The notes beneath the pieces are model-generated. The model ran no database searches and was not told the DNA's origin. It was given only the letters and a program-made list of their open reading frames with translations. Source: Mytilus californianus (lineage: Eukaryota). From it: a stretch of DNA of 64,000 nt. This document shows, in pieces, positions 7,368 through 48,900 of the stretch (positions are counted from its first letter, which is position 1; each line of letters begins with the position of its first letter). The stretch is taken from positions 27,466,001 to 27,530,000 of the forward strand of contig NW_026262637.1 in the NCBI RefSeq assembly GCF_021869535.1, in the 5' to 3' direction. The position numbers and the translations under genes are program-made.

Positions 7368-8830
7368 ATGTATATCAATGGTGCATATTCTTTAACATCA
7401 TTTACCAAGGACGAAATTTTACAAAATCACAAATCTGTCCTTATTTCTTTTGGTATCAACATCAAAGAAAACGAAGAAAATTTAGCATCATTATACTGGA
7501 TACCAAAACTACACAAAAATCCATATAAAGAACGATACATAGCTGGGTCATCAAAATGTTCGACTAAACATCTTTCTAAAGCACTGACTACTATTCTTTC
7601 TACAGTTAAAGATGGGCTTAAAAAATACTGTGATGAGATATATTCTACCAGTGGTGTTAACCAGATGTGGATTCTCAAAAATTCGAAAGATATACTGCTT
7701 AATCTTCGATCACAATCTTTGCAATTTTGCAGCAACATAAAGACTTTTGATTTTTCTACGCTTTACACTACAATTGCCCATGCTCAGTTGAAAGATCGAC
7801 TTCACCATCTCATTAAACAGAGCTTTTTCTATAAAAATGGGAATCGTAGATACAAATTTCTTGTTTTGGGTTACAATAATTCATATTTTGTGAAAAACCA
7901 CACTGAATCTACCAGAAAATATACTGAAGATGATATTATCAAAATGCTGGACTTTTTGATCGACAAGATATTTGTTGAGTTTGGAGGATTTATATTTCAA
8001 AAGACAGTCGGTATTCAAATGGGAACTAATTGTGCACCCCTACTGGCCAATTTGTTTTTGTACTCGTATGAAGCAGAATTCATTCAGAACCTTCTAAAAG
8101 ACAAAAAGAAAAAGCAGCTTGCGAAATTCTTTAATTTTACTTTCCGATATATTGATGATGTTCTATCATTGAATAACCCATATTTCAGCCAATACTTACA
8201 TCTCATATATCCCAGTGAACTTGAAATTAAGGATACTACTGATACTAGAAGGACTGCTTCATACCTTGATCTTTTCCTCAATATTGACACAGATAGACGA
8301 CTTCACACGAAAATCTATGATAAACGGGACGATTTCAACTTCCCAATTATCAATTTCCCATTTCTCAGCAGTAACATACCCTCTGCCCCTTCGTATGGTG
8401 TTTACATATCTCAATTGATACGTTATTCTAGTGCTTGTTCACACTATACGGACTTCATATACAGGAGTGTGCTTCTTACGCAGAAACTGCTCCAACAAAG
8501 TTATGAGGAGGACAGATTAAAAATGACACTCACGAAATGGTTGATCCATACGATGTGTCTTTGTCCAAACTAACTAAGGACATTTTTACCACGTGTTAGA
8601 TTGTGGTTTGTCATTACGTCGTCTGATCTTTTAATTACCGAACGTGACTTATTCCCGATTGTGACTGTTTTGCTGAGTGTGAAACCGCATTGCTGTAAGA
8701 CGTGTCATGGTACTTTTCTATCCCAAATTCATGTATTTAATTTTGATGTTATATTTGTTATTCTCGTCGGATTTTGTCAAATGTCTTAACGTCTTTTCTG
8801 TTATATTCGTGTGTTATGGTAAATGTAATT
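7368..8830 (+). mobile_element. 5'-truncated Penelope-like retroelement (Naiad-type, C-terminal RT), defective
   Basis: ORF 7368..8573 has LYWIPKLHK, motif A DFSTLYT, a long insertion-in-fingers, motif B' G.QMGTNCAP, motif C YIDD, then KRDDFNF and YGVYISQLIRY. No GIY-YIG domain follows the RT. The native-looking C-terminus HEMVDPYDVSLSKLTKDIFTTC* is in a shifted frame ending at 8600. Confidence 0.85.
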
Positions 8831-9289: not shown

Positions 9290-9890
9290 CAAAAGTATAT
9301 ATTATTCTAAATAATAAGGATGTTCTTGTCCCAGGCGGAAAACCCTGGCCGTGTTAGGCGCAACTTTTTGGAAGTTTTGGTCCTCGGTGCTCTTCAGCTC
9401 TGTACTTGTTTTGGCTTTCAAACTTTTTTCATCTGAGCATCACTGGTTAGTCTTGTGTGGACGAGACGCACGTCTGGCGTATTAAATTCTAAACCTAGTA
9501 CCTTTTGTTAGCTATTATTCGTGTGTTTCTTTGTCCTATATGTTCTCCCATTTATTTGTATTGTAGTCATGTCATGTAATGTTGTCATTTCAATGTTATA
9601 TTTAACATTGCCATAAAAGCGGGAGGTTTGGCATGCCACAAAACCAGGTTCAAACCACCATTTTTTTCTTAAAATGTCCTGTACCAAGTCAGGAAAATGG
9701 CCATTGTTATATTATAGTTCGTTTCTGTTTGTGTTACATTTTAATGTTGTGTTTTTGTTGTGTCGTTGTTCTCCTCTTATATTTGATGCGTTTCCCTCAG
9801 TTTTAGTTTGTAACCCGGATTTGTTTTTATCTCTATCGATTTATGAGTTTCGAACAGCGGTATACTACTGTTGCCTTTATGTATACAACA
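9290..9890 (+). repeat. Composite bivalve interspersed repeat with a degenerate hammerhead motif (9436-9481)
   Basis: cactggttagtcttgtgtggacgagacgcacgtctggcgta is a decayed version of the motif at 46540. The downstream part resembles repeats at 49270-49450, 57000-57190 and 63900-64000. Confidence 0.6.
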
Positions 9891-12163: not shown

Positions 12164-15100
12164 TCAACCAGTAGATGTTTTTGTTACATTAAGTCCCGGA
12201 ACAATCGGTTTGGTTTTTAGAATGTTATCTGCCTTCCAGAATTTTCCACCCGGTACTACTGGAACTGGTAAAACTTTTGAGGCCATATATCCCGGATGTT
12301 CATATAACATTTCATGGCCTTCAACACAAATGTTAAGGATTTCATAATTTCCAGATGGATCTGTTAAATATCGTACACATTCACAACCCGAGAAGGAGAT
12401 TTCAGCATTAGAAATGGGTTCACCGAGTTCATTTATTACTCGTCCAAACACTTGTGCACCTGGACATGCGCACACTTTACAACACGTTGGAACAGGTTCC
12501 GCAAAATTTGTACTACAAACTGTAAAGAAGTCAATAAATTAGATTTAGTATATAGAAACTGTTATATACCAACTGAGTTATTATCTGTTTGACCGTCAAC
12601 ACGATTTTTAAAAATTAATTCAAATAGGACTATATGTATTTGGTGTTTGAATATTAATGATACATTGAACGAAGTCCAGAAATGTTGTGTTGATTAATAA
12701 CTTCTCACCAACATTAATAAATTAGTGTTTTGTTTCATTTTTTATTAGTATTTTGTGCCTCACTAATTTGATAGACATTTTTCTATTGTTACCATAGACA
12801 TTTACAGACATGGAACGAAGTCTAGTTTGCTGAAATATTGTGTTTGATTAATATCTGCTCAACATCAATTCGTGTTTTGTATAATTTTTTATTTTATAAA
12901 TTGTGTGTCCTAAAACCCCGCATTTCATTTTATTCATATGTGTTATACTTTTCTTTACAGCTGACTATTAATCATATGCATTTTCTAAATATCATGGCAT
13001 ATTTGGGTTATATCAGACGAACATATTGTGTTATATCTTAAGTTATTTAAGGTTATTTTGAAGTGTAATGTGCTAATATTGTTTTGCATATATTGTGATT
13101 CATATCATATCAGACAAAAAGGGCAGCTACTTCAAATTAAAATCATATAATTTGTTTACCTTTTGGACCAGACGATGACAAACTTAATGATGGAAGTGTT
13201 GGGGATGGTGTTGGTTGTTCTTTTGAGTAATCTGGATTTATTGGTGATGGCGTGGGTTTCTTTGGTTCTGGTGTTGTTGGTTCAGGTGTAGATTGTCTTG
13301 TTGGTTTTGGTGTAGATACTGATGACATGGGCGGTTTTGTTGGTTCAGGAGTAGATGGTTTTGTTGGTTCTGGTGTTGATGGTTTTGTTGGTTCTAGTGT
13401 TGATGGTTTTGTTGGTTCTGGTGTAGATGGTCTAGTAGGTTCAGGAGTAGAAGTATTGGTTGATTCAGATGTAGATGGTTCTGTTGGTTGTGGTGTTGAT
13501 GATTTAGTTGGTTCTGGTGTTGATGGTTTTGTTGGTTCTGGTGTAGATGGTCTAGTAGGTTCAGGAGTAGATGTATTGGTTGGTTCAGATGTAGATGGTT
13601 TTGTTGGTTCTGGTGTTGATGGTTTTGTTGGTTCTGGTGTAGATGGTCTAGTAGGTTCAGGAGTAGATGTATTGGTTGGTTCAGATGTAGATGGTTTTGT
13701 TGGTTCTGGTGTTGATGGTTTTGTTGGTTCTGGTGTAGATGGTCTAGTAGGTTCAGGAGTAGATGTATTGGATGCTTCAGATGTAGATGGTTTAGTTGGT
13801 TCTGGTGTTGATGGTTTTGTTGGTTCTGGTGTAGATGGTCTGGTAGGTTCAGGAGTAGATGTATTGGTTGGTTCAGATGTAGATGGTTTTGTTGGTTCTG
13901 GTGTTGATGGTTTTGTTGGTTCTGGTGTAGATGGTCTAGTAGGTTCAGGAGTAGATGCATTGGTTGGTTCAGATGTAGATGGTTTTGTTGGTTCTGGTGT
14001 TGATGGTTTTGTTGGTTCTGGTGTAGATGGTCTAGTAGGTTCAGGAGTAGATGCATTGGTTGGTTCAGGTGTAGATGGTTTTGTGGGTTCAGGTGTAGAT
14101 ACTGATGACATGGTAGGTTTTGTTGGTTCTGGTGTAGAAAGTGTTTTTGGTTCTGGTGTGGATGCTTTAGTTGGTTCTTGGGTGGATGGTTTGGTTTGTT
14201 CTGGTGTAGATACTTTTGTTGGTTCGAGTGTTGATGACATAGTTGGTTCTGGCGTTGATGATGTAGATGGTTTTGTAGGTTCTGGTGTTGATGGCGGGGA
14301 TGGCTCCGAAGTTGATTGTTTAGTTGGTTCTGGGGTCGAAGGTTTAATTGATTCTTGAGTTGATAGTTTGGTAGGTTCTTGTGTAGCTTGTTCTATAGTA
14401 GACTGGGCAGCTTGTTCTGGTGTTGTTTGTTCAGATGTAGATGATTTTGTTGGTTCTGGTGTTGAAGGTTTTTTTGGTTCCAGTGTGGATGATTTTGTAG
14501 GTTGCAGTGTCGATAGTTTTGTTGGTTCTGGTGTGGATTGTTTGGTAGGTTCTGGAGTAGATAATTTAGTCTGTTCTGGTGTAGATAGTTTTGTAGGTTC
14601 TGGTGTGGATGGCTTAGATGGTTCTGGTGTTGATGGTTTAGTTGGTTCTGGTGTCGATGGTTTAGTAGGTTCTGGAGTAGACAATTTAGTAGGTTCTGGT
14701 GTAGATAGTTTGGTTGGTTCTGGTGTTGATGGCTTAGATGGTTTTGATGTTGATGGCTTAGTTGGTTCTGACGTTGATAGTTTTGTTGTTACTTGTCTAG
14801 ATGGTTTGGTTGGTTCTGGTGTTTTTTGGTCAGTTGTAGATACTTTTGTTGGTTCACTGGTAGGTTCTGGTGTTGGGGGACTGGTTGGTGGATTTGTTGA
14901 CAATGTTTGTTTCACTGATGAGGTTGGTGGTGTTGTTTGAATAGATGACGAATCTGATGTGACAGGCTTAGTTGGGATTCGCATTGCGGTAGATAGCGTG
15001 ATCTGCTCAGTCGTTGAAACTGATTTTGTAACAGCTTGAGTCGAAGATTTCGTTGATTGGATGGTTGCTAACGTTGTTGAAATTGTCGGCTGTGGAGTTT

Positions 15101-15925
15101 TCGGTTGCATTGTTGTAGGCAATTCCGAACTTGAAACAGTTGATGCTTGGACGGAGGAAGTCGGGGCTTCTGTTGGAAATATTGACACAGAGGACGCCTC
15201 TGTCAGCTTTTGTGTTGTGTAGCTGGTTGTCTTTTCTAAAGAAAAAAATATCTTTATATACATATTTGTGTTTTTTTTTGGTTAATACACATCTTATATA
15301 CCATGTCTAAGTCCGTCTAGTTTCATTTCTGGAGCCCTCTCTGTTCCATTTTGAATCACATGAACGACTTTTAACAACGACTTGAAGTCATATGTATTTA
15401 CATTACCAAAACGTTATTTAAGGATGTTCGCTCCTCTGTGTTAAAATAACAAGCTTTTTAAAAGACTGTTATAGATTGATAGTATATAAATAAAGGAACT
15501 AAAAAAGCAGAAAAAAATGAAGGGTCCGTGTGCTTGTTTTCGAGATAGAAGCCATTGAAAATTTGGCGGGAAATGATTCTCTCTAGATTTTCCATACATT
15601 TAACATTGGCACCTTTTTTATGTCTAAAAGTATGAAAAAATAACAAGGATTTAATAAAATTTTCAAAGATGGCATTTCAAAATATATTTAATCAAATTAT
15701 GAAAAGAAAAGTAGGGTTAGTGGGAATTTTTTTTTAATGGCACTACATGGTTAATCCCAGAGGAATCCGAATATCTGGCAAACATTCAAAAACAAGAGGA
15801 GCGAACATCCTTAAACAATTTGCAGATCAATCATTTCCATTGATCTTTTTATCAGAAACTAATATTAAAAAAAGATAATAAAAGAAATAATATATGCTGT
15901 AGTCTTACAGAAAGATTAAGACGCC

Positions 15926-15958
<33 letters not shown>

Positions 15959-18900
15959 AGGGGTAAAAAATCCTTAGAATTACGAAATATTTTAAGTTTT
16001 GTAAGCAGTTGATTTATAATTATGTCCATATCAATGATTATTCATGTCAACACATAAGTGCTGACTACTGGGTTGGTGAAAGATTCGGTGAGACAACATC
16101 TACCAGCAGTGAATTAAAAATGTGTACGCCAGACGCGCGTTTCGTCTACAAAAGACTCAGACGCTCAAATAAAAAGGTTCAATTGGCCAAATAAAGTACG
16201 GATTTGAAGAGCATTGTTCCAAAATAGAGTAAAACATGGTTGAAAACAATTCAAAAATTTGATTGATATAAGAGTGCCTACATAATTTGTGAAACGAATA
16301 GAATAGCATATGAAATACAGCAAAGCTATGTTATATTTAAAAAAAAACAAGTATCGTTAGGACAATTAACCAAAGAGACTTATTAACGTTAAAAACAAGC
16401 AACAACGTTGTAATGTAATATAATTTCAATAAAAACACCGCTTAGGGCAACTATGCGACCAATGCTCTCATATTTGCCTAATGTCGAAGCTTTATACATC
16501 TACATTGAATGTATATTTAAGACATATAGTACGTACTGTAAAATAAAATATTTTGTAGGTTATGAACTTCGTACTAGGTGAAATAAATGTATAGAGTTTA
16601 TTTGGTAACAAATCATCAATTTGAATAATATCATATCCAAATATATTCATGAATCTTTTCAGGTAAAATGTAGAATTTCTCCAAATCTGACTTGTACATT
16701 AAAACTTGATCAAGATATATTCAATATTTAAAGGATGAACGTTCTGGAGGTTTTGATGTTGAACAGTAAAAATAAGACAATATACCATAGTCAAAACGTG
16801 CAAACAGTCAATATCTAACGTTTAAACTTAATAAATAGATCAAAGGTTTCTTTTGATATTCAGTTTAACACATGTAAGTGAATACACGAATCGTTTTCGT
16901 AATTTTTAGGATTTGTTTTCTATTTGTCTGTTTAGTGCTTTAATTTTATTTCGTATTATCAACGTAATTACATAAATACGATATAATGGATGCTCAATAT
17001 TTTATAGTAATGTATATTGTTATTAGAGAATGTTATCTAACCATGCTTTCCTTGAACCAAGTCCATTTCATTTGGAGCAAATAAAATATGCTTTAACTGA
17101 ACTACGATTTCGACCAATTGAAAGAATATATTTGTTAAATTTAGGTTTAGTTGTGTCATTACAGTACATCATTTGAAAAAAATTGACATTTATATTAACA
17201 CATTACAGAAAGTAAGCAATTTAAATAAGAATCATTGTTGTTAAACTATTTATGGGACTTGTTGCTTCTTAAAACAGCAAAAACAATGCAAGTATTAATT
17301 GTTTTAACTGATGTGTATCGACAGAAAATGGGTAGTCATTTGTCTTCGTGGTTAAAACTCGAGCTTATCCAAAGAAAATAACCGAAAACAAGTCTTCTTG
17401 CGAATCCCTTTAAACGTTTGTGACAATTGATTTTGCCATTTGATAAGGGACTTTCCGTTTTGAATTTTCCTTGGAGTTCGGTATTTTTGTTGTTTTACTT
17501 TTTAAATAATTATTATCACTTGACGTTTAGTACATTATAAAATAAAGCTGCTTGAAATTCCAAATGAAGATAAGATAAATTACCCGTGTGCATTAAACGA
17601 TTAAAAGCGTCTCTATTGTTTCATGGAACATAAGAAAAGGGAAGACTCGACTATTAGTATCATATTTTGGTGAATAAAGTCACCATAGATACCAAGTTTA
17701 AATTGTGTACGATAGACGCGCGTTTCGTCTACAAAAGACTCACCAATGACGCTCGAATAAAAAATGAAGGATTTTTGTCCTAAGTAAAAAAAATGAACGT
17801 ATGGCAATGTTTAACTCATTATATTACTCTCCTTCCAAACAAATCAAATGACAAAATCAAAGAAGGTAAACATTACTGTTTTAATGAATAACGGCATTGT
17901 AGATAACATGTTTATCAATATAAACATAATCATTCATATCCATTAAGATACTGGACATATTTCTGTTGTATAAACGGTTGAGTATTATATCTAAAATAGT
18001 TTCTTCCACGGGATTATAAATAGACTTTGCATGTTGATTTACATTTTCTTTCAACATTTCTCCATATCCAACTGAAGATTGTATCCATGGCAATACGATA
18101 TCATACGCCGATCTGTCCTCACTGAAAACTAAGAATTTTGACTGTATTTCATCAAAAGTATCCATGCATGTTTCCTCTTCCAAATATTTTATAACGTTGC
18201 GCCGGACATCGTGATTAGTAATTCGTACATTTTCATAGTTCTTAGCAGCTTGGATACCATATTTCTGTGCAGATTTTACAACATTACTCAAATACACGGG
18301 TTGGAAACGAATATAGGGATCGGCCCAAATAACGGTCTTAAATTCCTCAAGTGAAAGTCCTATCATCAGAGGCTTTAACGCATAGTGAATAGTCAGATTT
18401 CCAAATTTTTTAAAAGGAAATACTCTTATTTCACAGAAGGAACACTTGGTTGTAAGATAATCAATGTGATCTTTGGACAGTCCAAAATCGTAGATCACTA
18501 ATCTCTGTATGTCTTGCAAAGGATATATTTTACGTACTACGTTCTTCAAAAATGCTTTCCCCTCGCTTATGTTTTCATCAGACATGGCGGTAACAATAGC
18601 CGGTGATGTCGGTTTATTCGATTGTTTTCCAAAGTCAGACTTACGTGGAGAGTTGCCAATTTTATGGATGATATACAGGAAACTCTTAACCTCGTTTTGG
18701 ATCATTTTTGGTAAATGTGATTTGTCGTCTACGTTCGATTCGTTTTTAGATATTGTAGAATTCAGTTCCAATGTAGTTTTAGTCTTATTTTCGAAAAGAG
18801 CAAGCAAAGGAGAATGAGATTTTTTTACGTTTAACACTTTTTTAATTTTGTCCGACATATTACTAGCGTATCCATGAATAACATTCAAGTTTTCTTCATA

Positions 18901-21900
18901 TGTTTTATTGGTCACGCTTTGGCAGTTGAAATGTTGATTTACTTTCTCGTCGTGGTTAGTATTGAAAAAATGGTTAAACTGACACTTCCATTTATCTGGA
19001 ATTTCAAGTTGTCCACAGGACTTTTCCGTTCGCTCGTTGATCATGTAAATAAAAAAGGTCATAGTTCCAGAGATAAGGATGAACTGTACAAGACCGAGCA
19101 TAAAATGTTTTCCGGAACATTTTTTCTTTTCTCGTTTTTCGTCGTTTTCAATGACATCCTTTTCGCAGATAGTTTTTAACTCGATATCATTTTTGGAGCG
19201 TCTCCTTCTTCGAATACACAAAATTCCCTTCCATATTGCAAGTATGGAAAGATACAAACACAGCATAGCTCTTTGTCATTTATGTTCTGGATTCTAAGTT
19301 CTGCAACAAGATCGAGTTTTTATTATGTAAATGTTAATTAGTGCCATTCATACATCAGTGATGATTATTATTATTTTATTAGTACTATCATGATAATTGT
19401 TTTTTTTATTATTATCATTATTATTTTATTATTAGTACTATCATAATATTTTTTTAAAATTATTATTAGTATTATTATTACTGTGTGTTGTTATTTTTAT
19501 AATTGCATTTCAAATTAGTAAATAGATTAAGAGACATATGCATAAATAAAAGTTAAAAAATGAATTATAATGAAAAATCTAGAATATCTTACCATTTCTT
19601 ATTTTAAAAGGACGCTACTATATCTATCCATGTCATCTGCGACTCCATACGTATTCGGTAGAAGTGCGACGATTAAGGCCTTAAGGTAATGAATGGCATT
19701 CCTAGAACATGTACTTCCTCTTTATAAACCCCAATATGACAAAATTGTTACAACGGAATATCACGTCTCGATTAAACACGATATATATATTTAGATATAT
19801 AATTCGTTGTAATTTGTATTCACCACACAGTTAGATGAATGAATGTTAAAGAAAATGACATAGATACATTGAACTCAACCAAAACATATATACATCTATA
19901 AAGATTCCGCAATGTATTATTTGTTTATAAGGATGTGTTTGCTGCTAAATTCAAAATAAAAACATTTTCATAAATGAAATCTATTATCAAAAGAAAATGT
20001 ATAATATATAAAAACTATGGGAGAAAAATAGCGAGTTTGTTATCAGCATTTGAATCATTAGATTTTTTTGGTTTGAAAGAATTGTTTCTATAGATTTTAC
20101 ATTAACAAAAATTCATGGGAGGTAATTCATGGTTGACTTTCTTGAAAAAAATCAGGAATAAGAACAGTTATCCAAATATTCTGGCAGATAAATGATTGAG
20201 AAGTAAGCTTGTAAAATATTTAGGATAAAACATCCTTCTGATTTACATATACCGAAAATAATGTAATAATCAATTATATATTTTTTTTAATATTTCGATC
20301 CAGTGTGAAAACGTAATTGAAGAGAACGAACTTGTAAACAACTTAAAATTTACTTTTATTAACATTTTTTTGGTAAATGTTTGAACATACTTTGAAAACA
20401 TGAAAATGAAAATACAACCTGTACAAAGTCCACAGAATTTACGACAGGATGTTGTGGCTATGCATTTAAATTCTTCAGCTGTACATAAATTGTTTGGTAA
20501 ATTGCCACACTTCACGGAATCTTTACACATCAGCTCATCTGAAATGTATTCAATATTCTTTCATAATTGTAACTGTAGCTTGATAAGTGTGCTCAAATAT
20601 TCTGAATCTTCAATCGATTGTAAATTTGAAAAAAAAAAAATGTTTTTATTAAATATATTCAACCTAAAAATATCTTAGTCTTCCGAAGAGTACATTGTAA
20701 TTCCAAAATACTGAAAGCATTTTCATCCTATACTTTTGTTTAAGGTTCAAGGTTTATAATGCTTTTGGTACATACCTTTGCATGTATATTCCTGTTTTCA
20801 TTGACTGATATACTTAAACTAATATGAGGAAACAATAATCTATCTATGGTAAAACCTCATAAATTCCTGTTTTTTTTAATTATAAGTGATAAATACATAA
20901 ATCAAGGGAAAACTTGAGGGAAATACATGCACTCCAAATGGAGCGAGATCAGGTGCATCCACATAGTTAGCACATTTTTTCATACATGCATCACTCGCAA
21001 AACAAAATCACCCCTCAGCCAGAAGTAACCGTTTATTTTCGTCTCTGAAAACTTAAAAAATTTACATTTTTGTACTAAAATGTAAGCACAATGCTGTACA
21101 TATATTCACAAATGATAAAAAGAAATAACTGAAATTAACTGACTACCAATCTACATCAATCTTATGTGAATTCTCAAAAGCGTTCATTCTTATATTATCA
21201 GTTGAAAGGGTTATTGTAATCATAATGATGTAATACTAAAGTATTCAAATTTCTAAGCTTACTTGTACAATATCCACATCTGCGGGCACAGTTGGTTATT
21301 GCCCATGTTGTAAAAACCCCACTGCAGGCCTCGTCGTCATAGTTTGCACAATCATCTCTTTTATCCTTGCATGCTGTTTTAATAAAGAGTATTCAAATAT
21401 GAGAATATTCTACTAATGAGAAGTATTCATAAATTATTTGGATCGAATGATTGATGGAAGGATTGGGGTTTAACGTTCAATGATAAAAGTTACACACAGA
21501 TCAGGACGAGGACATGAATGCATGTCGTGTTTTGTACTAGTCGACACTGAGTTGTTTTAACATGTTAGTTCCCAAGGAAGACACTCCACACCACAAGGAC
21601 GCATTATTATAATTCCGACCAGACTATTCTTTTCTCTTATTTCTAAATGCCACGTGCTTAGCGGAGAAACGAAAATACACATTTTGATTTAGTCAAGTGT
21701 TGCAAATGGTTTCAAACATTGATAAGCTGGAAATCTTTACAATGTTTTTTTTTTGTCATATTCTTATTTTGGTTCCTTTCAAGCAACTCATTGTCCCAGA
21801 CCTCAAAACAATAATTCGTGTTTCCTAATACAGTTTTTTAAACTTCAGTTGTTTATTTACATTTATAAAACAAATTATTAGAGAACATTATACTCTATGC

Positions 21901-24900
21901 CTACCATCACCAGTAGGAAGCACTGGTACCGTTGTGGTATTGAGTGTATTTGGCTCCTCTGTGTGGACTGTCGGAGGTGTAACATGTTTTGTTGATAACG
22001 ATGTCATCCGGGTACCGTTTCCTATCCCCTGTGTAGTGATTCCCTGTATTGTTGGTATTGTCGACTCTGTTATGTTAGCGTGGTATGGCACTACAATTCA
22101 AAGATTTCGAAATTGAAAGTCATACATATGGTAAAGTTATAATTGAAGTGCATATAGATAAAACGATGTCCAATAAAATAAAATAATGTGAAAGTCGTCA
22201 AGATAAATAACAATCAAATATATGCTTGCATTCTCTTTTTAATCGAAATAGACATATACGAAAATAATTACTCATATACAATTAGCACTGGTAAAAGTTC
22301 AATCTTCACTAGTGGTACCTGTAAGATTAAAGCAACAAGATGTTGTTGAATCCTTGCTTTGGTAAACCTACCCAAATGTCTTAGCTGTGGATTTCGAATT
22401 AATATGCATTCAATAAATGAAGTTAAAAGTGAATGAGAAATTTTACAATTAATAACTTTCACTTCTCGTGTATCACACAGATAACCTGCATGTAATATTA
22501 TGTAGTCTTAGGTTATATATAGATATGTTATCCCCCCTACCCCCCCCCCTCCAAAAAAAAAATAGTCAAGGGGTGAATATCAAACTGAATTGACAGCCAA
22601 CCTTCAAATCAAGTGTAATTAATCAAATGCATCTCAACTTGTCTTATCAATGGCAACCGTATCCTTTGATTCTTAGCCAACCTAAGAAATATATAATACA
22701 AACCATGACATTAATTATGTCTCACCATTACTGAGTTATCCCTCATCCCGTTAAATTATTTAAACATATCCCTACAATTATCAGAGTGAATCCTCGTAGT
22801 TTCAGATATTATACGTACCCCCGGATTTATCAGAGTTATTTTTCATCTTAGATGTAACATACCTTCACATTTATTACAGTATTTTCTACAGTTAGTCCTA
22901 GACCAGCCAGCATAAAACGAGTCAGTACAAACATTGTCTCCATACTCGTCACAATTAGGAAGCTTGTCTACACATGGTGGTGTATCTAAGAGAGAGAGAG
23001 AGATAAGGCTTTGTTCAAGGAAGGAACATATTATCTATGAATTAGTAAAAGTAAGATCGCACTGTAGCAATGTTGCTGGGTAGATTATTTGTCAATTTGG
23101 ATTGTTAACTAACACTGGATGTCATTTTGTTTCTTCCAAAATTCTTACAACATATAGAACTTACAGATGTCGTTATAAACCATACATATTTCTAGTATTT
23201 CATACTAGGTGTGAGGATTCTCATTTTCGTCCACACCTCATTTATTGCTTAATCACTAAATACAAAGCTACATGCATACTCTGCAACAGAACGAGTAATT
23301 GCGTAGCTTCTGAAAAATGAGTGGATCAGACGAATGACATTGGAATTAAAACAACCACTTGTAAACTTGTAAACATATTTGTGTCCTTTTGGCTGTGTGT
23401 GATGTATAAATACGAAGCCACGTCCGGTTTGAATGTCTATGCAAGATGTCGAGCTCATCCTGAATATGCATGAAATATTTGTCACTGGATGAAGAGCAAA
23501 CGAAAAAAATCAATGAATCATAAACATATGTGAAGAAAATCAGAAATATGCCTCCATGCACCTGTCTTCAGGATACAGTGTAGTGAATAATACGAAATCC
23601 CCTGCTTTAAACTACTCCAGCATAGGGATTTACATATTGTTTACTGATGGAATGATGGCTGTTACGGCCAGAGGCAAATTAAATACATATCTAGGACGAG
23701 AATATGTTAGTACGATATATAAATATGAACCCTGCTTTGTACTATAGACCGACACGCTGAAACGGATTTTTAACGTGCTAGTTCACAAGGTAACAGTCTA
23801 TATGAAGACATGTCACCCTACCCGGACACATTATTCTGGCTCCCAGCTGACCAGTATTTGCCCCGGCTGGGGCGAACACGCTACCACGAGACCACCGAGG
23901 CGGTTTATTGTGTACTGAAGACAGGTACCACCTAACCGAAATCTTATACACATTTCTTCTTAGTCTGACATTTTCAATACAGCATGAAAACGAAATTACT
24001 GTTACGTTGGCCATCTGCGCAATTCGTGAATAAACTATACCAAACGATTAAAATAAAAAAGAAGAAATCCGATGGTCAAGGAGAAATTATGGATTGTTAT
24101 TTTGAATTTTCACAGAATAAGTTACATGCATATTGGTTAAAACAAACGAAAATGAGATCTCGTGTAACAATGTTTTAAAATAATTGGAGTATGAAGGTTT
24201 ATCATGTTATTTCAAATAACACAAGAAACAACTAAAGTTTTGAGTTTTTTGGATTTAAAGGTAAGAGTTGTCAATATGCACATACCAGGACAATAGCCAC
24301 ATCTATATGGACAGTTAACTTTTGCCCAAGGCGCATAGATCCCCAAGCATTTCTTGTCATCATAGTTCCAACAGTTTTCTTTTATATCCACACACCCTGA
24401 AATAGGATTAAAGTGTACTTTGTTGATATTATAATATATCCAAGAATATTAAGGAATTTTACTAACTATTGCTTTGTTTGACGTGTTTCTATTTTTTCAA
24501 ATTGATTTCCCTCACTTATTATTCTTATTTATGTATGTCCGAAATCACATAGGGTATCCTGGTCAATCCGAATCCCAAGGAGCAATTAATGAAAAGTTTG
24601 TAACGGTGTGTAGGTAAATTCTGGATCCGATTCCCACGGAGCATAATTCCTCCGTGGGAATTAGATCCAGGTTTTACTTTCCTACAGTTTCACACTTTTC
24701 ATTGATTACTCGTCGAGATTTGGATGTCTCCACGGTTTCGGATCGGGATACCCATTGTAGAAATGGTCTTTTGAAATACAAAATTAACATTAACTGTGAA
24801 AAGAATTGATGTAATGCAATTTCAGTGATTTCTCTTCGTTGTAGTGGTTTTATTTTATCTGCCTTTAGTCACTTAGTGTTGGTTTAAGCATAACATCTAT

Positions 24901-41185: not shown

Positions 41186-41395
41186 TTAACTGTGTATGAA
41201 ATATCCTTATCATAAAAATGAACATTTTACTAACTTTTAAGGACAACCAATTAGCAAAATGTGTGCCTTTTACATTTTGTTTCACATCTCTTTAAAGTTA
41301 TTTTGCAAAAACTGGACAAGAACAAAACGTAGACATCAAGCACACGAAGTTATTTGTTTATTATTTTACAAATCTATTTCAGAATAGAACCCAGG

Positions 41396-44300
41396 ATGTT
41401 CAGCATGGGGACAGGAGAAAATCATACAACAATGGCATGGGACAATATATCACATATTGAAAACAGAACCGTCATCTTCAGAAATTGGACAAACCCTGTG
41501 ATTGGCTGTTCCACCTGGACATCACCCAATCATTTTCTTTTTCAGCTAGCAAACTGTGTTCTATTAATAGCTCTGTTTGCCCCAGATGGAAAGAAAGGAA
41601 TACTCTTCATGCATGGATTCTTTGTTTTGGGTAATATCCCCATCGTTATCTTCTTTAATTCGACTACCAAAATATTACTCGCTAACAGTTCCTTTTTAAA
41701 TTTAAAAAATTCATTACATTCATTTTAATAGTATGCTTATAGTATGTGTTTTGTGTACTGTTGTTTGTATTTTATTTTTTTATTCTTTTTTGCCATGGCG
41801 TTGTCGGTTTATTTTCGACTTACGAGTTTGAATGTCCCATTGGTATCTTTCGCCTCTCTTTTACAGTATATCGTCAATTAATGTTATGCAATAGCAAAGC
41901 AAGAAATACACATTTGATGAAATTTTCTTCAAGGATTTATTACTCTGTTACAGTTTTTTTTTAAAGTTTATGGCAAAATGTCCAAATCCAACCCTGAAAT
42001 TATTATTGTATGCAGAGAAAATATCAGAAGTGTTTTTACATGTTCATACTGTGTATTCAATTCATATATCTTTTACAGGATTTTTACTGTTATCGGTATG
42101 GTCATGGGTTGTACTTTGTGCTCCTGATTTCTTTTCCTGGAATTTTTCTTTTATGGTCCTAAATGCAATTCAGACATTATTCCTGATGTACCACATCAGA
42201 CCAGTGAAGTTTTGTGATGAATTAGAACAAGTTTATGTGGCTCTCTTTCAACCCATGAAAATACCAAGGTATGTATAGAATAAACTGTTGATCTGTATAA
42301 AATAGAAGACGATGTCCGATTTAATCTTCTTTGCGATAAATGTTTGAAAAACATATAAATTGTTCGAAAGTGATATGATATAAAAATAAGGAGATGTGGT
42401 ATGATTGCCAATGAGACAACTATCCACCAAAGTTCAAATGAAGTGGATGTTAGTAATTATAGGCAACCGTACGGCCTTCAACAATGAGAAAAACCCATAC
42501 CGTATAATCGGCTTTAAAAGGCCCCGTCATGAAAAATATGAAACAATTCAAATGAGAAAAGTAACGGCCTAATTTAGAACAAACAATTTACGAAAAGAAA
42601 ATATGAAAGACATGAACTAACGAAAACCACTTAACTACAGGCTCCGGACTTGGGACAGGCACATAAAGCATATGGTGGGTTGCTCATCATATGATCGGGA
42701 TCGCGTTAAAGTAGAATATTGGAACAATACTCTGAATTTTTGTTTTGAAATGAAAGTTATTTTTATCGGTCTCCCCTTCACCTGTATATTCCTGCTCTGT
42801 TCCGATATCAATGTTTGTCCTGACCTTAATAACTAAGACCTTGAAAAATCACCTACGTCATAATGTTTGACTTCCAGTTAGCTTATAAAACTATTGTTTC
42901 GAATTATACAATCTGGTGAATCGTATATCAGGTTGTCCTTAGGTATATTTGCAAGATATCTATTCGACAGTATATGAAGAGCTACCATTGTGGTCATAAG
43001 GGTGATCGCACTTACACCTTAACCCCTAAAAGAGAAAGCCCGACAATCCAGGAACGGTTCCCGAGTATTAACACTCATAAAAGTTACACCTTTGAGATAA
43101 CTAGGCATACGCCAAGATAGGTATATTTTCATTTTGGGACTATCATCCCCTACGGAATACACAGTATACACTTAATATTTCATTTTTTTATTTGTTAAAC
43201 ATTTAGTGAGGCCTCAATTGGATATTAGCCAATACAAAAATCTTATAATCGGTGTACCATGTATTAATGGTTTACTAACGTAAAACCCAGATTAACATGT
43301 TAGTCTGGGCGAACGTAGTTTATTATTCATTAGTTGAAATTAGGCCTTAAATTAGCTTATAGTAACTGCGAGTACTCTTAGATCGGTTGTCCTTGATTGT
43401 TTTGTGTGTAGTTTTTATTTTTTTTTTTTTTTTTGTATTTAGTACCGAACTGATGAGTCAAGCCCTTTGCAATTGATTTTTACAGTTTTTATTCCACCAC
43501 ATTCTGTGTGTGCCTATACTAAGCTCTCAGTGCGATGAAGAACATGGAGAACGAATTGTCGATGAGGACCTTAAGTTATCTGTGGTAATATTGAAGTTCT
43601 AACTTCTACAAATACACCCTTGTTCTCAAGTGGAGTCAAACAATTTCAAGGTCGAATACTTTTTCAGATGATACTAACTGAACTATTGTTAACTTGTTTT
43701 TGCGAATAATATGAATGTAATATCTGCCACTAGGCATTGAATGACTAATAATCAATTAACTCATGTTTCAGACATTTGTTCAAGAAACTGGTTTCTACGG
43801 ATTATTGTACTCTGACATCGCTCCATGAAGGTGAGGCTTATGCTACACAAGGGATTAGTAAGACGGACAGACTTGGTCTTTTGATGTCTGGAAAGTAAGT
43901 TGTCATTAAAGAAGTGAAATGTCTTAGTCCGCATTAATTTGATAAATCTACTACAAGAATTAAACTTTACATTGCATATTCACTTTGAATTAGAGATGAC
44001 TTAAAATTTTACATTAGTGTTATGTCAAGCCTTCATTTGAGGTATTTTAAACTTTAAAAAATGATTCAAGCATACCTGGACTTCAAACTTTCAGTATTTG
44101 GTGTTCTTAAAATATTATATATATTATTTCAGCAAAAGGCTTTGTCAAATTAAATTTTGTGTCGGTGTTTTTTTTTATTACTACATGTACTACTAAGCAC
44201 TTTAGTATACTTAAATATATAAATATATAAATATATAAAAGCTATTTATCCGTACGCACTTCGGTTTTAATTATTATATGAGAGTTTATCTATTACTTAC

Positions 44301-47300
44301 CAGAGGTTGGTCATTTACCTGTAGGCACTGCTGTTGCTTTAGTTATAAAATAAAGTTTGTTTGTTAATGTTAAAAGGTTGGTAATTTACCAGTTAATGTT
44401 GTAGTTTCCATGATTTTGTATGTTTGTCTTTTACTGACCGAAGGTACACTGCCTTCCTGAAGACATCCCAGTTTTCTTGCTACCGTAACAAAGCTTGTTG
44501 CTACTGACTAAAGGTTCATAGCATTTAAGTCTACTCCACGTCCATTTTTATTCATAACAAGTCACAGTGTCATGTTTCATTTTTTTGTTTACAGAATGAA
44601 TGTTTACAGTCATAACAACCTCCTTCACCAAATACACGAAAAGGAATTTATTGACTCACCTGAATTTGAATCTGGTGTTGGTGGCGACGAGAAATACCAG
44701 GTAATAATCAAGTCATTTAATAATACTATTAACTAAAAGAAAGATATGGTTAACAATATGATAAATTCCAAGTTATCCAAACGAGGATAAAAGTTACAGT
44801 TGTGTATGTTACACTTTGTTGATAATCGATAGTAGGTTTCAATAGTTTTGAGACAAGGTTTAGGTTTAGTCAAACAAAATAATACCAACGAAATAATAAA
44901 AAACGATAAGGGAAAGAATGTCAGAAACACCATGACCAAAAGTAAAGATAAAATGGTAAACACAGCAAATAGTCTGACAGTTAAACAAGAGAGGCAAAAG
45001 ATACCAAACGGACATTCAAACTCATAAGTCGAAAATAAACTGACAACATCATGACAAAAAAAGAAAAAAGACAAACAACAGCACACAAAACACAACATAG
45101 AAACTAAAGACTAAGCAACACGAACCCGCACAAAACCGGGATAATCTCAGTTGCTCCAGAAGGGTAAACCAATTCTGCCCCACGTTTGGCACCCGTCGTG
45201 TTAGATAAATCTCCAATGGCGCGGAATAGGTCTGTAGTCATCTATTTCATAGTCGTTCCATACAGACATGTCTCGCACAGTAGGTAACCTATAATAGTCC
45301 GCAGATACACATACATATTCGTAGGACATATATTAGCCGTCTAGCGTTTTTCCCAGTCAATTTGTATTTTGTTATATTTTTACACTTCACACAGAATAAC
45401 ATTTCATAAAAATATGACCACAGAAATTCAACATCAACAATATCCTTTTATATATATATATATATATATATTGGAAACCTTGCACAGTAAGATTATATGA
45501 TTGAATGCAATGTTTCGCTTTGTAGGTATCAATCTTTGCCGGATCTATGTGTCGATATATATTTTGGTCAAGACACAGTTTGGAATATTTGTTGATAAAG
45601 GAATCTTACCTTGCTAACGTATTCAACATTATATTAGGTCGAGATATCACCAACAAACTGTATGCTTTAAATGAAAAGGTAACAGTGGCTTTTAGCTATA
45701 CTTACACGATTTTGAAAATTTTTCGAAGGTTATACAAATGCTTTGTGTTTGCGTTTATTTCTTAAAATGTCTTAATTATTGAAATTACAACAAAAGGCAA
45801 GTTTGGTTCCCTCGAAACAAATGAAAATATAATCGTAGCATGCGTTACATGTTTTTGTATTTAGATTTGAAAAGATATGTTATTTGGAACAAAGACATAG
45901 ATATTGCAAGCGTAAAACTGGTCTTGTCAGTTGTGTTTTATGCTTGGAATAAAAGTTCATCAGCAGTGGAACAAAAGAGTAAAGGATACACTGAACGTTG
46001 TTTACTTGACACATTTTTTGTATCGAATTTCATTAGATATTTATTTTAATGTCAATACTTGAAACAAATCTAAAACAAAACATTACTGAAATATTCCTTA
46101 AACAAAAGCTCTGTCAATATTAAAATATCGAGATAAATTTAAGCCATTGTTTAGAAAAGAGTATCAAAAGTTGTTCTACAATTCTGTAGGTAGCATTAAG
46201 AAAAGGATCACGAGTTGACATCAGACTACCAAGTGTTTCATCTTCTCTAAAAGCGATACAGGATTTACGTAAAACAGTAGCTGGTGTTGGAGATGAAAGT
46301 CCGTCTCACACTCCACATACTATCATTGATGATACAGGAGATGATGACGTGTATATAGATGGTACGTGTTCATTAATACAAAAAATGATAGTTGTCTAAA
46401 CCTATTAATAGAATTTTCATGAGCTTTTTAGGTATTTTTTTTGTTATATAGCCCTTCAACTGTTTCGGTTCTTACACATATTCGGCTTTCAAATATTCGG
46501 TTTTGATAGTTATCAAAGGTACCAGGCTTATAATTTGATACGTCAGACGCGCGTTTCGTCTACAAAAGACTCATCAGTGACGTCAGATCAAAATTAGAAC
46601 GTTCCTGATGAAGGTAAATCCAGAAAAGCGTTTCGGACGCATGAAATTATTTAACGTGTTGTTTTCATTTTTTTTTCAACACAAATTGATTAAAATTGTT
46701 AATTATAGATTCTTGATTTTTCAAGACTATCATAAGTTTTTTTACAATACGAGAACACGATTTCCTGTGGAAAGTTTTTGATTTATTAACTACAGTGACT
46801 TTTCAAATATTTTTGACATGAATATTAAGGTTTAAAAACTGTAAACATGAGATAACATAAATGATAAGTGTATGAATATTGTCTCCAGCTTCTTTTTTTA
46901 TTTTGTGCTCTTAAATTTGTAATAAATATTTGGCCAAAAATACATTCAGTGACATGAGAACCCCGGCAAATGAAGGGTAAGTAATGTAGTGATCCCTAAC
47001 TATAAACATTTAGTTTATATATTATTATTCAAAAATACCACTGAAAAACAATGTTTGATTGGATGCGGTTTTATATAAAACATTGATTCAACCTTAATCA
47101 AAATTTGACACAAAATTGAAATGAAGTAAATATTTCAGTCATTACTAGAACAACGGATTGGACATTAGACCTTGTCATGTTACTAGAACAAAAACTGAAC
47201 CGTTTAAGATAAGTTTTGACATATTTCTGCATTTTGCATATGACATGTTTAATTTACAGTTTAAAGTGTAACGTCAACTTATCGAAGGAAAGATATACGA

Positions 47301-48099: not shown

Positions 48100-48900
48100 T
48101 ATACGCTATAATTTATTGTTGTGGGATACCATACGGCATATTTTGTTAATAGTGAACAAAAAAATAAAACATGCTACACAGAAGAACAAGTGATCAGTAT
48201 GCCGGAGTTTCTTATTGACAACATATTTGTTGAAATTGGAGGTAGACTTTTTCAGCAAATTGTATGCATTCCTATGGGTACAAAGTGTGCGCCTCTCCTT
48301 GCCGACCTCTTCTTATTTTCATATGATCGGAGTTCCTTCAGACACTTATCAAAAACAAGAAGATCAAACAAGCCAGAACATTCAGATATATTGATGATGT
48401 TCTTTACATTTACAATCCAAACTTTTCTGATTCGGTTCCATTAATATATCCTCCAGGACTAGAAATTAAAAAAAAAAAACAGACACGGCTTCCTCCGCCT
48501 AATTTTTAGACTTATACCTCGAATTTAACATAAGTGGTCATCTCAGTACCAGAATCTTTGACAAACGAGACGGTTTTAATTTTGAAATTATAAATTACCC
48601 CACCTTAGCAACAATATTCCAACTTCGCCTGCATATGGGATATACATTTCCCAACTCATTCGGTATTCAAAAGCTTGTAGCTGCTACTCAAACTTTATAA
48701 AAAGTCACCAGTGTCTGAGCAGAAAGTTGATGAACCAGTGTTATGTCAAAGAACGTCTCGTCCATTTTTCTAAAAAAAAGTTCATTGGAAGATACCAAGG
48801 CCTTGTTGATAAATATTCGTTATCATCTTCACAAATAATACATGATGGTCTTGAAGTATGGATTTTAGGTACTGACGTTGTTTATCATCTTAATTACGTG
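48100..48900 (+). mobile_element. Degenerate Naiad-type Penelope-like RT fragment (3' half)
   Basis: GYHTAYFV…EFLIDNIFV…PMGTKCAPLLADLFL, DKRDGFNF, YGIYISQLIRY; frameshifted. Confidence 0.85.

What the first reader, a model, noticed from the sequence alone, without database searches (positions are those of the whole stretch)
17881..19728. Glycosyltransferase-like DUF1647 gene nested, same strand, in the intron directly before the mucin exon
The ShKT-B4 donor (20419) and mucin acceptor (15235) are phase-compatible, and the 5.2-kb intron between them holds a 461-aa ORF with its own TATA-like element and leader exon. The DUF1647 frame cannot be spliced into the host: it is closed by stops just upstream of its ATG. 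Same-strand nesting is uncommon. A putative sugar-transferase fold sitting inside a heavily glycosylated mucin gene suggests a coupled enzyme-substrate unit. This is a hypothesis, and motif changes (WADPY, VTAMSDEN) may mean it is catalytically altered.
Basis: partly seen in the sequence, partly recalled or inferred. Interest (0 to 1): 0.72.

Follow-up and report, generated by a model that had tools for sequence, protein, structure and literature searches.

The report
Glycosyltransferase-fold gene nested in mussel mucin gene
A conserved, separately annotated mussel gene for a Golgi-type membrane protein with a glycosyltransferase-like fold very probably sits, same strand, inside an intron of a secreted ShKT-mucin gene; the arrangement is old, but nothing shows that the enzyme-like protein acts on the mucin.

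Summary
The 461-aa ORF (17881-19266, minus strand) is real, intact and under purifying selection (dN/dS 0.07-0.24). Its C-terminal domain just passes Pfam DUF1647, and its remote relatives are clear DUF1647 proteins. A confident AlphaFold model matches only GT-A glycosyltransferases (Z up to 15.5).

It lies in a 5.2-kb phase-1 intron between the eighth ShKT exon (donor at 20419) and a 692-codon PTS/mucin exon (acceptor at 15235) of Mytilus californianus. Order, strand and splice phases are conserved in M. galloprovincialis, M. trossulus and a much more distant mussel-like relative; M. edulis keeps the order. Public gene calls in three species show a large host gene spanning a stand-alone 461-aa gene. 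A conserved promoter/leader block lies upstream.

No junction read joins ShKT-8 to the mucin exon. One RNA-like run has ShKT-8 at depth 166 and the mucin exon's 5' end at 0. Nesting is therefore well supported but not shown at transcript level, and co-expression is not supported.

The mytilid protein has replaced most residues that are nearly invariant in the family (candidate metal and nucleotide ligands), so its chemistry is probably altered.

Verdict: a real nested gene of a known kind; the enzyme-substrate link stays speculative.

The parts
20419..20538 (-). Host exon: eighth ShKT domain, phase 1-1, donor CAG|GT after 20419
   Evidence: Sequence. ShK pattern. A 1475-nt X1 contig (depth 166) lies on exactly 20419-20538 and ends at 20419, with no read-through. 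The sites are conserved in 3 Mytilus species and L013.
15236..20418 (-). Host intron (5183 nt, phase 1) that holds the nested gene, dispersed repeats (15288-16257, 17422-17809) and a long poly-G run
   Evidence: Colinear in M. galloprovincialis and M. trossulus.
19593..19770 (-). Conserved promoter-like block and putative non-coding leader exon (about 19695-19593) of the nested gene; TATAAA at 19726-19721; donor ATG|GTAAGA
   Evidence: Three-species alignment: 0.83-0.87 identity against roughly 0.6 in neighbouring intron, donor invariant. A similar motif and ATG|GTAA donor exist in L013. Not covered by any laid read.
19301..19592 (-). Putative 5'UTR intron of the nested gene (292 nt, AT-rich, with a 53-nt tandem repeat)
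   Evidence: The acceptor TTGCAG|A is conserved. X1 and X3 contigs stop matching at 19298; an X7 genomic-like contig runs through.
17821..19300 (-). Nested gene exon 2 (short 5'UTR, whole CDS, start of 3'UTR); the 3' end is approximate
   Evidence: X1 contig of 1540 nt, depth 14, 0 gaps, 63 mismatches, laid on 17821-19298.
17881..19266 (-). CDS of the nested gene, 461 aa plus stop, no intron
   Evidence: Orthologues are 89/60/57% identical. RefSeq stand-alone proteins exist in M. edulis, M. trossulus and M. galloprovincialis. dN/dS 0.07-0.24.
19039..19104 (-). Main transmembrane segment (residues 55-76), preceded by a hydrophobic N-terminus (1-17) and a basic loop (RRRRR...KKK)
   Evidence: Hydropathy and 8 N-glycosylation sequons downstream. 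Conserved in the orthologues.
17911..18621 (-). DUF1647 / GT-A-fold domain (residues about 216-452)
   Evidence: Pfam 26.7 bits. HMMER relatives. AF2 pLDDT 87. GT-A matches with Z 10-15.5.
13160..15235 (-). Host exon: PTS/mucin-like, 692 codons, phase 1-1, 24-nt (PEPTKPST) repeats x about 62; no start codon or signal peptide of its own after the acceptor
   Evidence: The acceptor is conserved. An STP-rich counterpart exists in L013.
12164..12519 (-). Host terminal exon, CarboxypepD_reg-like beta-sandwich, phase-1 acceptor, stop at 12164-12166
   Evidence: Pfam 28.6 bits, below the gathering score of 32.3. Sequence. 95% identical to the C-terminus of M. edulis model P0005 and 71% to L013. The public host gene call ends here.
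20539..33563 (-). Upstream host exons: signal-peptide exon (about 33563-33459), ShKT-1 to ShKT-7 and linker exons
   Evidence: tblastn of M. edulis and M. coruscus models. ShK pattern scan. Pfam ShK on 26276-26569.

Best explanation
The region holds a small two-exon gene: a non-coding leader and one exon with the whole 461-codon CDS. It most likely has its own promoter and poly(A) site. It lies in the sense orientation inside the 5.2-kb phase-1 intron between the last ShKT exon and the PTS/mucin exon of a secreted protein gene of Mytilus californianus (signal peptide, ShKT x8, mucin, CarboxypepD_reg-like domain).

Its product has the layout of a Golgi glycosyltransferase: a basic cytosolic stretch, a membrane anchor, an N-glycosylated stem, and a lumenal GT-A-fold domain of the DUF1647 family.

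The mytilid lineage sits on a very long stem branch and has replaced most residues that are nearly invariant in the family. These include the aromatic/His pair after strand 1, the Ser after the single Asp at the DxD position, a C-H-R-x-D-Q-S motif and three cysteines. It is nevertheless under strong purifying selection. It therefore most likely does something other than the (unknown) canonical DUF1647 reaction: either a changed donor or metal requirement, or a non-catalytic binding role in the secretory pathway.

Shown here: the ORF, its conservation, family, fold, splice geometry and conserved synteny.
Inferred: its own promoter, Golgi location, host continuity across the intron, and altered catalysis.
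For: Gene reality:
- Intact ORF.
- Orthologues in M. edulis, M. trossulus and M. galloprovincialis annotated as stand-alone 461-aa proteins.
- dN/dS 0.21-0.24 within Mytilus and 0.07-0.12 to distant relatives.
- RNA-like contigs cover the whole CDS and break at the predicted acceptor.

Own control region: conserved block 19770-19590 with an invariant donor; a counterpart in L013, which also has AATAAA after its stop.

Nesting:
- The ShKT-8 donor is used with no read-through.
- The mucin exon starts at a conserved phase-1 acceptor and has no start of its own.
- The mucin donor and terminal-exon acceptor are also phase 1.
- Same-strand host gene calls span the ORF in three species.
- The same order and phases occur in L013, with dS>2.
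- The M. edulis model P0005 contains all parts in this order.

Family and fold.
Residue replacements. Long stem branch (1.63 against a median of 0.35).
Topology.
Against: - No read or contig joins 20419 to 15235.
- In X1 the mucin exon's 5' end has depth 0 while ShKT-8 has 166.
- The one run on record as RNA with raw reads (X18, about 6% sampled) shows neither gene.
- The leader exon has zero depth in every run laid.
- The TATA box is not conserved as TATA.
- The host gene calls are predictions, and I could not retrieve their sequences.
- The full-length protein misses Pfam, and the domain passes by only 1 bit.
- The roles assigned to the replaced residues come from general GT-A knowledge, not from any DUF1647 experiment.
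Confidence: 0.65

Rival explanations
1. Exon 2 of the 'nested gene' also serves (or instead serves) as an alternative 3' terminal exon of the host. ShKT-8 would splice 20419->19300 and the transcript would end at the nested poly(A) site. The product would be a ShKT-only protein with a short out-of-frame tail (41 codons in M. californianus). The 461-aa ORF would be translated only from transcripts that start at the internal promoter.
For: - In X1 the ShKT contig ends exactly at the donor 20419, which indicates a graph branch.
- The ORF contig carries 32 unlaid letters beyond 19298. That equals the 2 remaining exon bases plus 30, which is k-1 for a k=31 assembly, as expected if it starts at a branch inside a shared upstream exon.
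- The leader exon has zero depth in X1 and X3, and the mucin exon is not covered in X1.
- A sense-oriented acceptor and poly(A) site inside an intron are the usual ingredients of such isoforms (PMC3192792).
Against: - The 30 letters could not be read, so their origin is unknown.
- Depth is 166 against 14, so most ShKT-8 transcripts go elsewhere.
- The conserved leader block with its invariant donor argues for an internal start.
- The alternative-frame tail is not conserved: 7 codons in L013.
- RefSeq keeps the 461-aa gene separate in three species.
Confidence: 0.2
2. There are three tandem genes and no nesting. The ShKT gene ends in an exon I did not find, the DUF1647 gene is intergenic, and the mucin plus CarboxypepD_reg exons form a separate gene.
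For: - No junction read exists.
- X1 has ShKT-8 at depth 166 and the mucin 5' end at 0.
- The spanning host models are computational.
- The ab initio models in M. edulis are demonstrably chimeric.
Against: - The ShKT-8 donor is used, and no exon-like coverage lies between it and the nested promoter.
- The mucin exon begins at a conserved phase-1 acceptor, without a start codon or signal peptide, and no conserved coding block lies at 17600-15300.
- All four junctions are phase 1 and stay so in a relative with saturated dS.
Confidence: 0.12
3. Enzyme-substrate unit: the nested protein glycosylates the host's mucin domain, and nesting ensures co-expression.
For: - GT-A fold and a lumenal orientation.
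- The position directly before the PTS exon is conserved over a long time.
- In C. elegans, DUF1647 genes lie in clusters of glycosylation genes (PMC7614267).
Against: - Depth patterns in X1 and X3 are not parallel.
- The nested protein has lost most family-invariant residues.
- In the 57% relative (L003) the exon upstream is an LDL-receptor class A exon, not ShKT.
- No DUF1647 protein has a known activity.
- Conserved linkage is expected for any gene trapped in an intron.
Confidence: 0.08
4. The ORF is a decaying or non-functional relic (for example a dead retrocopy) that stays open by chance.
For: Intronless CDS. Loss of family motifs.
Against: - The 461 codons are open in 31% GC DNA and in every species examined.
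- dN/dS is 0.07-0.24, and the replaced residues are themselves invariant among mytilid orthologues.
- A canonical Ostrea gene is also intronless, so this is no sign of retroposition.
Confidence: 0.02

Closest known systems
Pfam PF07801 DUF1647 (C. elegans T15D6.x-type Golgi single-pass proteins; uncharacterized bivalve proteins such as Ostrea edulis XP_056013205.1 and Dreissena polymorpha XP_052245606.1)
   Same: Homologous over residues about 215-452 (E down to 3e-22). Same layout of membrane anchor, stem and lumenal domain. Shares E235, D260, G262, K298-P299, W314, D316, R320 and P393-W394.
   Different: About 100 residues longer at the N-terminus. Only 20-28% identical. Very long stem branch. 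Replacements: H232N, F/Y233I, W297L, S318Y, C397S, C403E, C417Y, H418N, R419P, D421E, Q422E. Barely reaches the Pfam threshold.
GT-A glycosyltransferases, chiefly retaining families GT6 and GT8 (BoGT6a 4cj8, glycogenin 1zcu/3u2t, GTB 2y7a, LgtC 1g9r)
   Same: Predicted fold: Z 14-15.5 over 180-215 residues; Foldseek probability 1.0. A strand followed by an Asp lies where the DxD motif sits.
   Different: No detectable sequence similarity. Identity in the structural alignments is 6-15%. The motif is D-P-Y (family: D-x-S), not DxD. No activity is known.
Intronic nested genes of metazoans
   Same: A complete gene lies inside one intron of a larger gene, with a single coding exon. About 41% of human nested genes are single-exon (PMC3192792).
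   Different: It is on the same strand as the host, which is the minority class (about 37% in humans). It is conserved across deeply diverged mytilids. Host continuity is not yet shown by a transcript.
ShK-domain-rich secreted proteins of bivalves (e.g. Pecten maximus 'titin-like isoform X7', P0182)
   Same: The host's N-terminal half is a run of ShKT domains on phase 1-1 exons, 38% identical to the Pecten protein over part of its length.
   Different: The host adds a roughly 690-residue PTS/mucin exon and a CarboxypepD_reg-like end. Whether the Pecten gene holds a nested gene was not tested.

Membership tests
DUF1647 (PF07801) | Score at or above Pfam's gathering threshold | tested here: met
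   Domain alone: 26.7 bits against 25.7. The full-length protein gives no hit. The margin is 1 bit.
DUF1647 (PF07801) | Nearest remote relatives are themselves clear members | tested here: met
   9 of 10 top remote HMMER hits score 30-60 bits on PF07801.
DUF1647 (PF07801) | Near-invariant family residues (S-S-N-H-[FY]; W-K-P; W-x-D-x-S-x-R; C...C; C-H-R-x-D-Q-S) | tested here: not met
   Eleven positions conserved in 34-41 of 42 other members are replaced in all four mytilid orthologues. W314, D316, K298, P299 and G262 are kept.
GT-A glycosyltransferase | GT-A (Rossmann-like alpha/beta/alpha) fold | tested here: met
   AF2 model pLDDT 87.2. All top 50 Foldseek and VIA-align matches are GT-A enzymes, with Z up to 15.5. 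This is a predicted structure only.
GT-A glycosyltransferase | DxD (or equivalent) metal/nucleotide-sugar motif after strand 4 | tested here: not met
   The sequence after the strand TVIWA is D316-P-Y; the family consensus is D-x-S. The position is assigned from the model's secondary structure, not from a residue-level superposition.
GT-A glycosyltransferase | Transfer of a sugar from an activated donor | not testable with these tools
   No DUF1647 member has a reported activity (PMC7614267).
GT-A glycosyltransferase | Type II Golgi topology with a lumenal catalytic domain | tested here: inconclusive
   Hydrophobic segments at 1-17 and 55-76 flank a strongly basic loop, with 8 N-glycosylation sequons after the second segment. 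This is hydropathy only; no localisation data exist.
Nested (intronic) gene | Lies wholly within an intron of a host gene whose flanking exons are spliced together | tested here: inconclusive
   Phase-compatible conserved sites, a used donor, and host gene calls in 3 species. No junction read exists, and the mucin exon is uncovered in X1.
Nested (intronic) gene | Own promoter and own poly(A) site | tested here: inconclusive
   Conserved upstream block with a donor. ATTAAA in M. galloprovincialis and M. trossulus and AATAAA in L013 after the stop. The X1 contig's match ends near 17821. No 5' or 3' end mapping was possible.
Mucin (PTS domain) for the host exon | Long tandem Pro/Thr/Ser-rich repeats in a secreted protein | tested here: met
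   24-nt unit x about 62, 692 codons. A signal-peptide exon lies upstream. O-glycosylation itself is not testable here.

The most novel reading that the evidence does not exclude
The nested gene and its host form a conserved regulatory and functional unit. Host transcription through the intron would gate the internal promoter, or capture exon 2 as an alternative terminal exon, so a cell makes either the full mucin or the ShKT-only form plus the DUF1647 protein. The divergent, motif-altered GT-A protein would act specifically on the host's PTS domain, as a new transferase or as a non-catalytic glycan or mucin-folding partner.
Probability: 0.08. Interest if true: 0.7.

Novelty: new member of a known kind. 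Interest (0 to 1): 0.35.

Why it matters
It is a clean, deeply conserved example of a sense-strand nested gene in a mollusc. It corrects chimeric public models: M. edulis CAG2253669.1 and CAG2190566.1 fuse the nested ORF into the host.

It gives fold-level evidence that DUF1647 proteins have a GT-A glycosyltransferase-like fold. It also defines a mytilid lineage whose conserved loss of the family's signature residues makes it a candidate pseudo-glycosyltransferase or re-tooled enzyme.

If the nested protein really served the mucin that surrounds it, that would be an unusual eukaryotic case of an enzyme gene housed inside its substrate's gene. Nothing here shows that.

Tried and rejected
- Pfam on the full-length protein: no hit. 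Only the isolated domain scores.
- phmmer and profile search against PDB sequences: nothing meaningful.
- Word search with the mucin exon's N-terminus to fetch the host model: blank. The likely cause is that host models are non-representative cluster members; P0005, at 1861 aa, sits in a cluster represented by a 461-aa protein. The blank therefore says nothing.
- Word search with the ShKT half of P0005: only a Pecten protein.
- Logan contigs encoding the protein or the terminal exon (L001, L007-L012) all proved colinear with genomic DNA, so they give no splicing information.
- Raw RNA reads of X18 covered only dispersed repeats.
- Retroposition as the origin: rejected as unsupported, because a canonical Ostrea gene is also intronless while the Dreissena gene has at least 5 coding exons.
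- A coding role for the alternative frame entered from the host donor: the tail is 41 codons here but 7 in L013, so it is not conserved.
- Literature searches for the accession numbers and for a glycosyltransferase nested in a mucin gene found nothing.
- Earlier scan notes: none for this place or these words.


Full report
WHAT IS THERE

The window is part of scaffold JAKFGE010000015.1 of GCA_021869535.1, the Mytilus californianus reference genome (PMC9710001). It contains no N.

The ORF named in the finding exists as described: 17881..19266 on the minus strand, 461 codons from an ATG. In DNA of about 31% G+C, a frame of this length cannot be open by chance.

It is open and colinear in every relative recovered:
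- M. galloprovincialis, M. trossulus, M. edulis and an unnamed Logan sample: 89% amino-acid identity.
- Two more distant relatives from host-associated metagenome assemblies: 60% and 57%.

Pairwise dN/dS is 0.21-0.24 within Mytilus and 0.07-0.12 to the distant relatives, with dS above 2. It is therefore a functional protein-coding gene.

FAMILY AND FOLD

The full-length protein gives no Pfam hit. The C-terminal 256 residues alone reach PF07801 DUF1647 at 26.7 bits, one bit over the gathering score.

An exhaustive HMMER search found 176 relatives at E<=1e-3, but only two below 1e-30. All match residues about 215-452. Nine of the ten best remote hits are clear DUF1647 proteins at 30-60 bits. The named ones are uncharacterized proteins of oysters, pearl oysters, unionids and Dreissena.

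A 46-sequence domain alignment gave a confident AlphaFold model (pLDDT 87.2, pTM 0.87). Foldseek against the PDB and an independent all-against-representatives search with VIA-align returned only GT-A glycosyltransferases among the top 50:

| Match | Z |
|---|---|
| BoGT6a | 15.5 |
| Glycogenin | 14.9 |
| GTB | 14.5 |
| LgtC | 14.2 |
| Kre2p | 13.7 |

There is no sequence-level link to any solved structure. 'Glycosyltransferase-like' therefore holds at the level of predicted fold only. No DUF1647 protein has a known activity. In C. elegans the family is noted only as Golgi-type single-pass proteins sitting in clusters of glycosylation genes (PMC7614267 and PMC3534327).

TOPOLOGY

There are hydrophobic segments at residues 1-17 and 55-76, separated by a strongly basic loop. 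Eight N-glycosylation sequons follow the second segment. This puts the GT-A domain in the lumen. That placement is an inference from the positive-inside rule.

ALTERED MOTIFS

Compared with 42 other family members, all four mytilid orthologues replace the following:

| Position in the 461-aa protein | Other members | Mytilid clade |
|---|---|---|
| 232 | H in 34/42 | N |
| 233 | aromatic (F/Y) in 40/42 | I |
| 297 | W in 38/42 | L |
| 318 | S in 40/42 | Y |
| 397, 403, 417 | C in 41/42 each | S/A; E/N/G; Y |
| 418 | H in 39/42 | N |
| 419 | R in 41/42 | P |
| 421 | D in 39/42 | E |
| 422 | Q in 41/42 | E |

They keep E235, D260, G262, K298-P299, W314, D316, R320 and P393-W394.

By the model's secondary structure:
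- 229-233 is the loop after strand 1.
- D316 follows strand 4, where the DxD motif sits in GT-A enzymes.
- 417-423 precedes the long C-terminal helix.

In well-studied GT-A enzymes these three places bind the nucleotide and the metal. This is established knowledge of GT8, GT6 and GT2 enzymes, applied here by inference without a residue-level superposition.

The clade sits on a stem branch of 1.63 substitutions per site (median branch 0.35), with short branches inside it. That pattern is a burst of change followed by conservation. The likeliest reading is a changed or lost catalytic chemistry with a retained, selected function.

GENE STRUCTURE OF THE NESTED GENE

- The frame is closed by TGA four codons before the ATG and by TAG just inside the exon.
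- A strong acceptor (TTGCAG|A) puts the exon start at 19300.
- Contigs of two RNA-like runs from different studies (X1, depth 14, covering 17821-19298 without gaps; X3) stop matching at 19298. A genomic-like contig of X7 runs straight through.
- Upstream, a block at 19770-19590 is 83-87% identical in M. galloprovincialis and M. trossulus, against roughly 60% for the surrounding intron. It ends in an invariant donor ATG|GTAAGA.
- Its TATAAA (19726-19721) reads GATAAA in the other two species.
- L013 has a similar motif, an ATG|GTAA donor, an acceptor about 50 nt before the ATG, and AATAAA after the stop.
- The leader exon itself had no read depth in any run laid, so the transcription start is inferred.

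THE HOST

Mapping the M. edulis and M. coruscus models onto the window, together with a ShK pattern scan, gives the following on the minus strand:

| Element | Window coordinates |
|---|---|
| Signal-peptide exon | about 33563-33459 |
| Eight ShKT exons with linker exons, the last being ShKT-8 | 20538-20419 |
| The nested gene | see above |
| PTS/mucin exon (692 codons; 24-nt repeats x about 62) | 15235-13160 |
| Terminal CarboxypepD_reg-like exon (Pfam 28.6 bits, below threshold) | 12519-12164 |

All four junctions around the mucin exon are phase 1 and have good consensus sites. After its acceptor the mucin exon has no start codon or signal peptide. I saw no conserved coding block between the nested gene and that acceptor.

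The exons sum to about 1307 residues. The public gene call that spans the ORF on the same strand and ends at 12164 has 1239 residues. That total cannot be reached without most of the mucin exon.

Equivalent spanning calls exist in M. galloprovincialis (1409 aa) and M. trossulus (1524 aa), each with the 461-aa gene called separately inside. RefSeq names the 461-aa proteins as stand-alone uncharacterized loci. Three older models are chimeras or fragments: CAG2253669.1 and CAG2190566.1 run from ShKT-8 through its donor into the ORF.

CONSERVATION OF THE ARRANGEMENT

The whole 6-kb region is colinear in the three Mytilus genomes. The ShKT-8 donor, the nested acceptor and the mucin acceptor are all conserved.

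L013 is a 389-kb contig from a much more distant relative. It shows the same order on one strand:
- ShKT exons ending with the ShKT-8 orthologue (donor TCAG|GTAAGA, phase 1).
- The ORF.
- A 514-codon S/T/P-rich open frame entered at a phase-1 acceptor.
- A terminal exon 71% identical to the host C-terminus, also entered in phase 1.

In the 57% relative (L003, only 2.4 kb) the same-strand exon upstream is an LDL-receptor class A exon. That relative is either a paralogue or has a different host.

TRANSCRIPT EVIDENCE AND ITS LIMITS

- The one run on record as RNA with raw reads (X18, about 6% sampled) covered only dispersed repeats.
- X1 behaves like RNA, because its depth falls on exons with sharp edges.
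- In X1 a 1475-nt contig at depth 166 covers exactly 20419-20538 and ends at 20419, with no read-through. The donor is therefore used, and the assembly graph branches there.
- The same run has depth 14 on the nested exon and 0 on 14900-15287.
- Organism A's copy of that mucin stretch can be laid at the threshold used: a low-depth, genomic-like contig of X7 (run of the same organism label) lies on 14900-15216.
- X3 has the nested gene with almost no ShKT-8.

Three things follow. The junction 20419->15235 was not seen. The mucin exon is skipped or silent in X1. The nested gene and the host are not expressed in parallel.

The nested contig carries 32 unlaid letters beyond 19298. That equals the 2 remaining exon bases plus 30, which is k-1 for a 31-mer assembly, so it probably starts at a branch inside a shared upstream exon. 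Whether that exon is the leader or ShKT-8 could not be read. This keeps open a rival in which exon 2 doubles as an alternative terminal exon of the host.

COMPARISON WITH KNOWN THINGS

Nested intronic genes are common in animals. About 63% of human ones are antisense to the host and about 41% are single-exon (PMC3192792). A sense-strand case is the minority class but not exceptional.

The intronless CDS is not evidence of retroposition: a canonical Ostrea DUF1647 gene is also intronless, while the Dreissena one has at least five coding exons.

I found no paper on a glycosyltransferase nested in a mucin gene, and none on these accession numbers.

VERDICT

The structural part of the interpretation (a sense-strand nested gene with a GT-A fold and altered motifs) is well supported, but it lacks the decisive junction read. 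The functional part (an enzyme-substrate unit) has no support, and the little expression evidence available points the other way.

The case is a new, well-conserved member of known kinds: a nested gene, and a divergent DUF1647/GT-A protein. It is already present as separate loci in RefSeq annotations.

Noticed in passing
window 15935-15975: On the minus (host sense) strand there is an uninterrupted run of about 40 G inside the host intron. Read laying reported reads 'cut' at 15918-15973.
   Followed up: no
window 17422-17809 and 15288-16257; further copies at 9388-9481, 46508-46582, 49370-49448, 57108-57187, 58187-58271: Short dispersed repeats (SINE/MITE-like, sharing a 'GTAGACGAAACGCGCGTCT' core) in the host intron. 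They reach very high depth in all runs, up to about 270,000 in X7, and 95% of the laid X18 reads run on into unlike sequence. The signal therefore comes from copies elsewhere.
   Followed up: partly
window 19279-19277: An upstream ATG lies 13 nt before the main ATG, out of frame, and opens a roughly 30-codon overlapping uORF. The ATG is conserved in M. galloprovincialis and M. trossulus.
   Followed up: partly
P0005 (CAG2253669.1) and P0009 (CAG2190566.1), M. edulis: These public ab initio models read through the ShKT-8 donor into the nested ORF. P0005 goes on into the mucin and terminal exons (1861 aa). They are chimeric annotations of two genes.
   Followed up: yes
L003:172-417 (+): In the 57% identical relative, an LDL-receptor class A exon lies about 500 nt upstream of the ORF on the same strand, instead of a ShKT exon. 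This is either a different host or a paralogous locus.
   Followed up: no
window 41354-42278 (+): Two exons of a Popeye-domain (POPDC1-3, PF04831) gene; the second scores 80.9 bits.
   Followed up: partly
window 7368-8573 (+), 48121-48444 (+), 56100-56567 (+): A reverse-transcriptase-like ORF (401 aa; RVT_1 E 0.018) and two shorter related fragments sharing the 'FRYIDDV' motif. They are retroelement remnants.
   Followed up: partly
window 57648-58087: A 240-bp unit repeated 1.8 times at 99% identity, pointing to a recent tandem duplication.
   Followed up: no
window 54619-55374 (-): A 251-aa ORF with an internal hydrophobic, signal-like stretch and no Pfam match.
   Followed up: no
window 16339-16723: A 977-nt X1 contig (depth 5.9) matches this intronic stretch with many small indels, and the rest of the contig lies elsewhere. 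It could be a repeat copy or a structural difference; this is unresolved.
   Followed up: no
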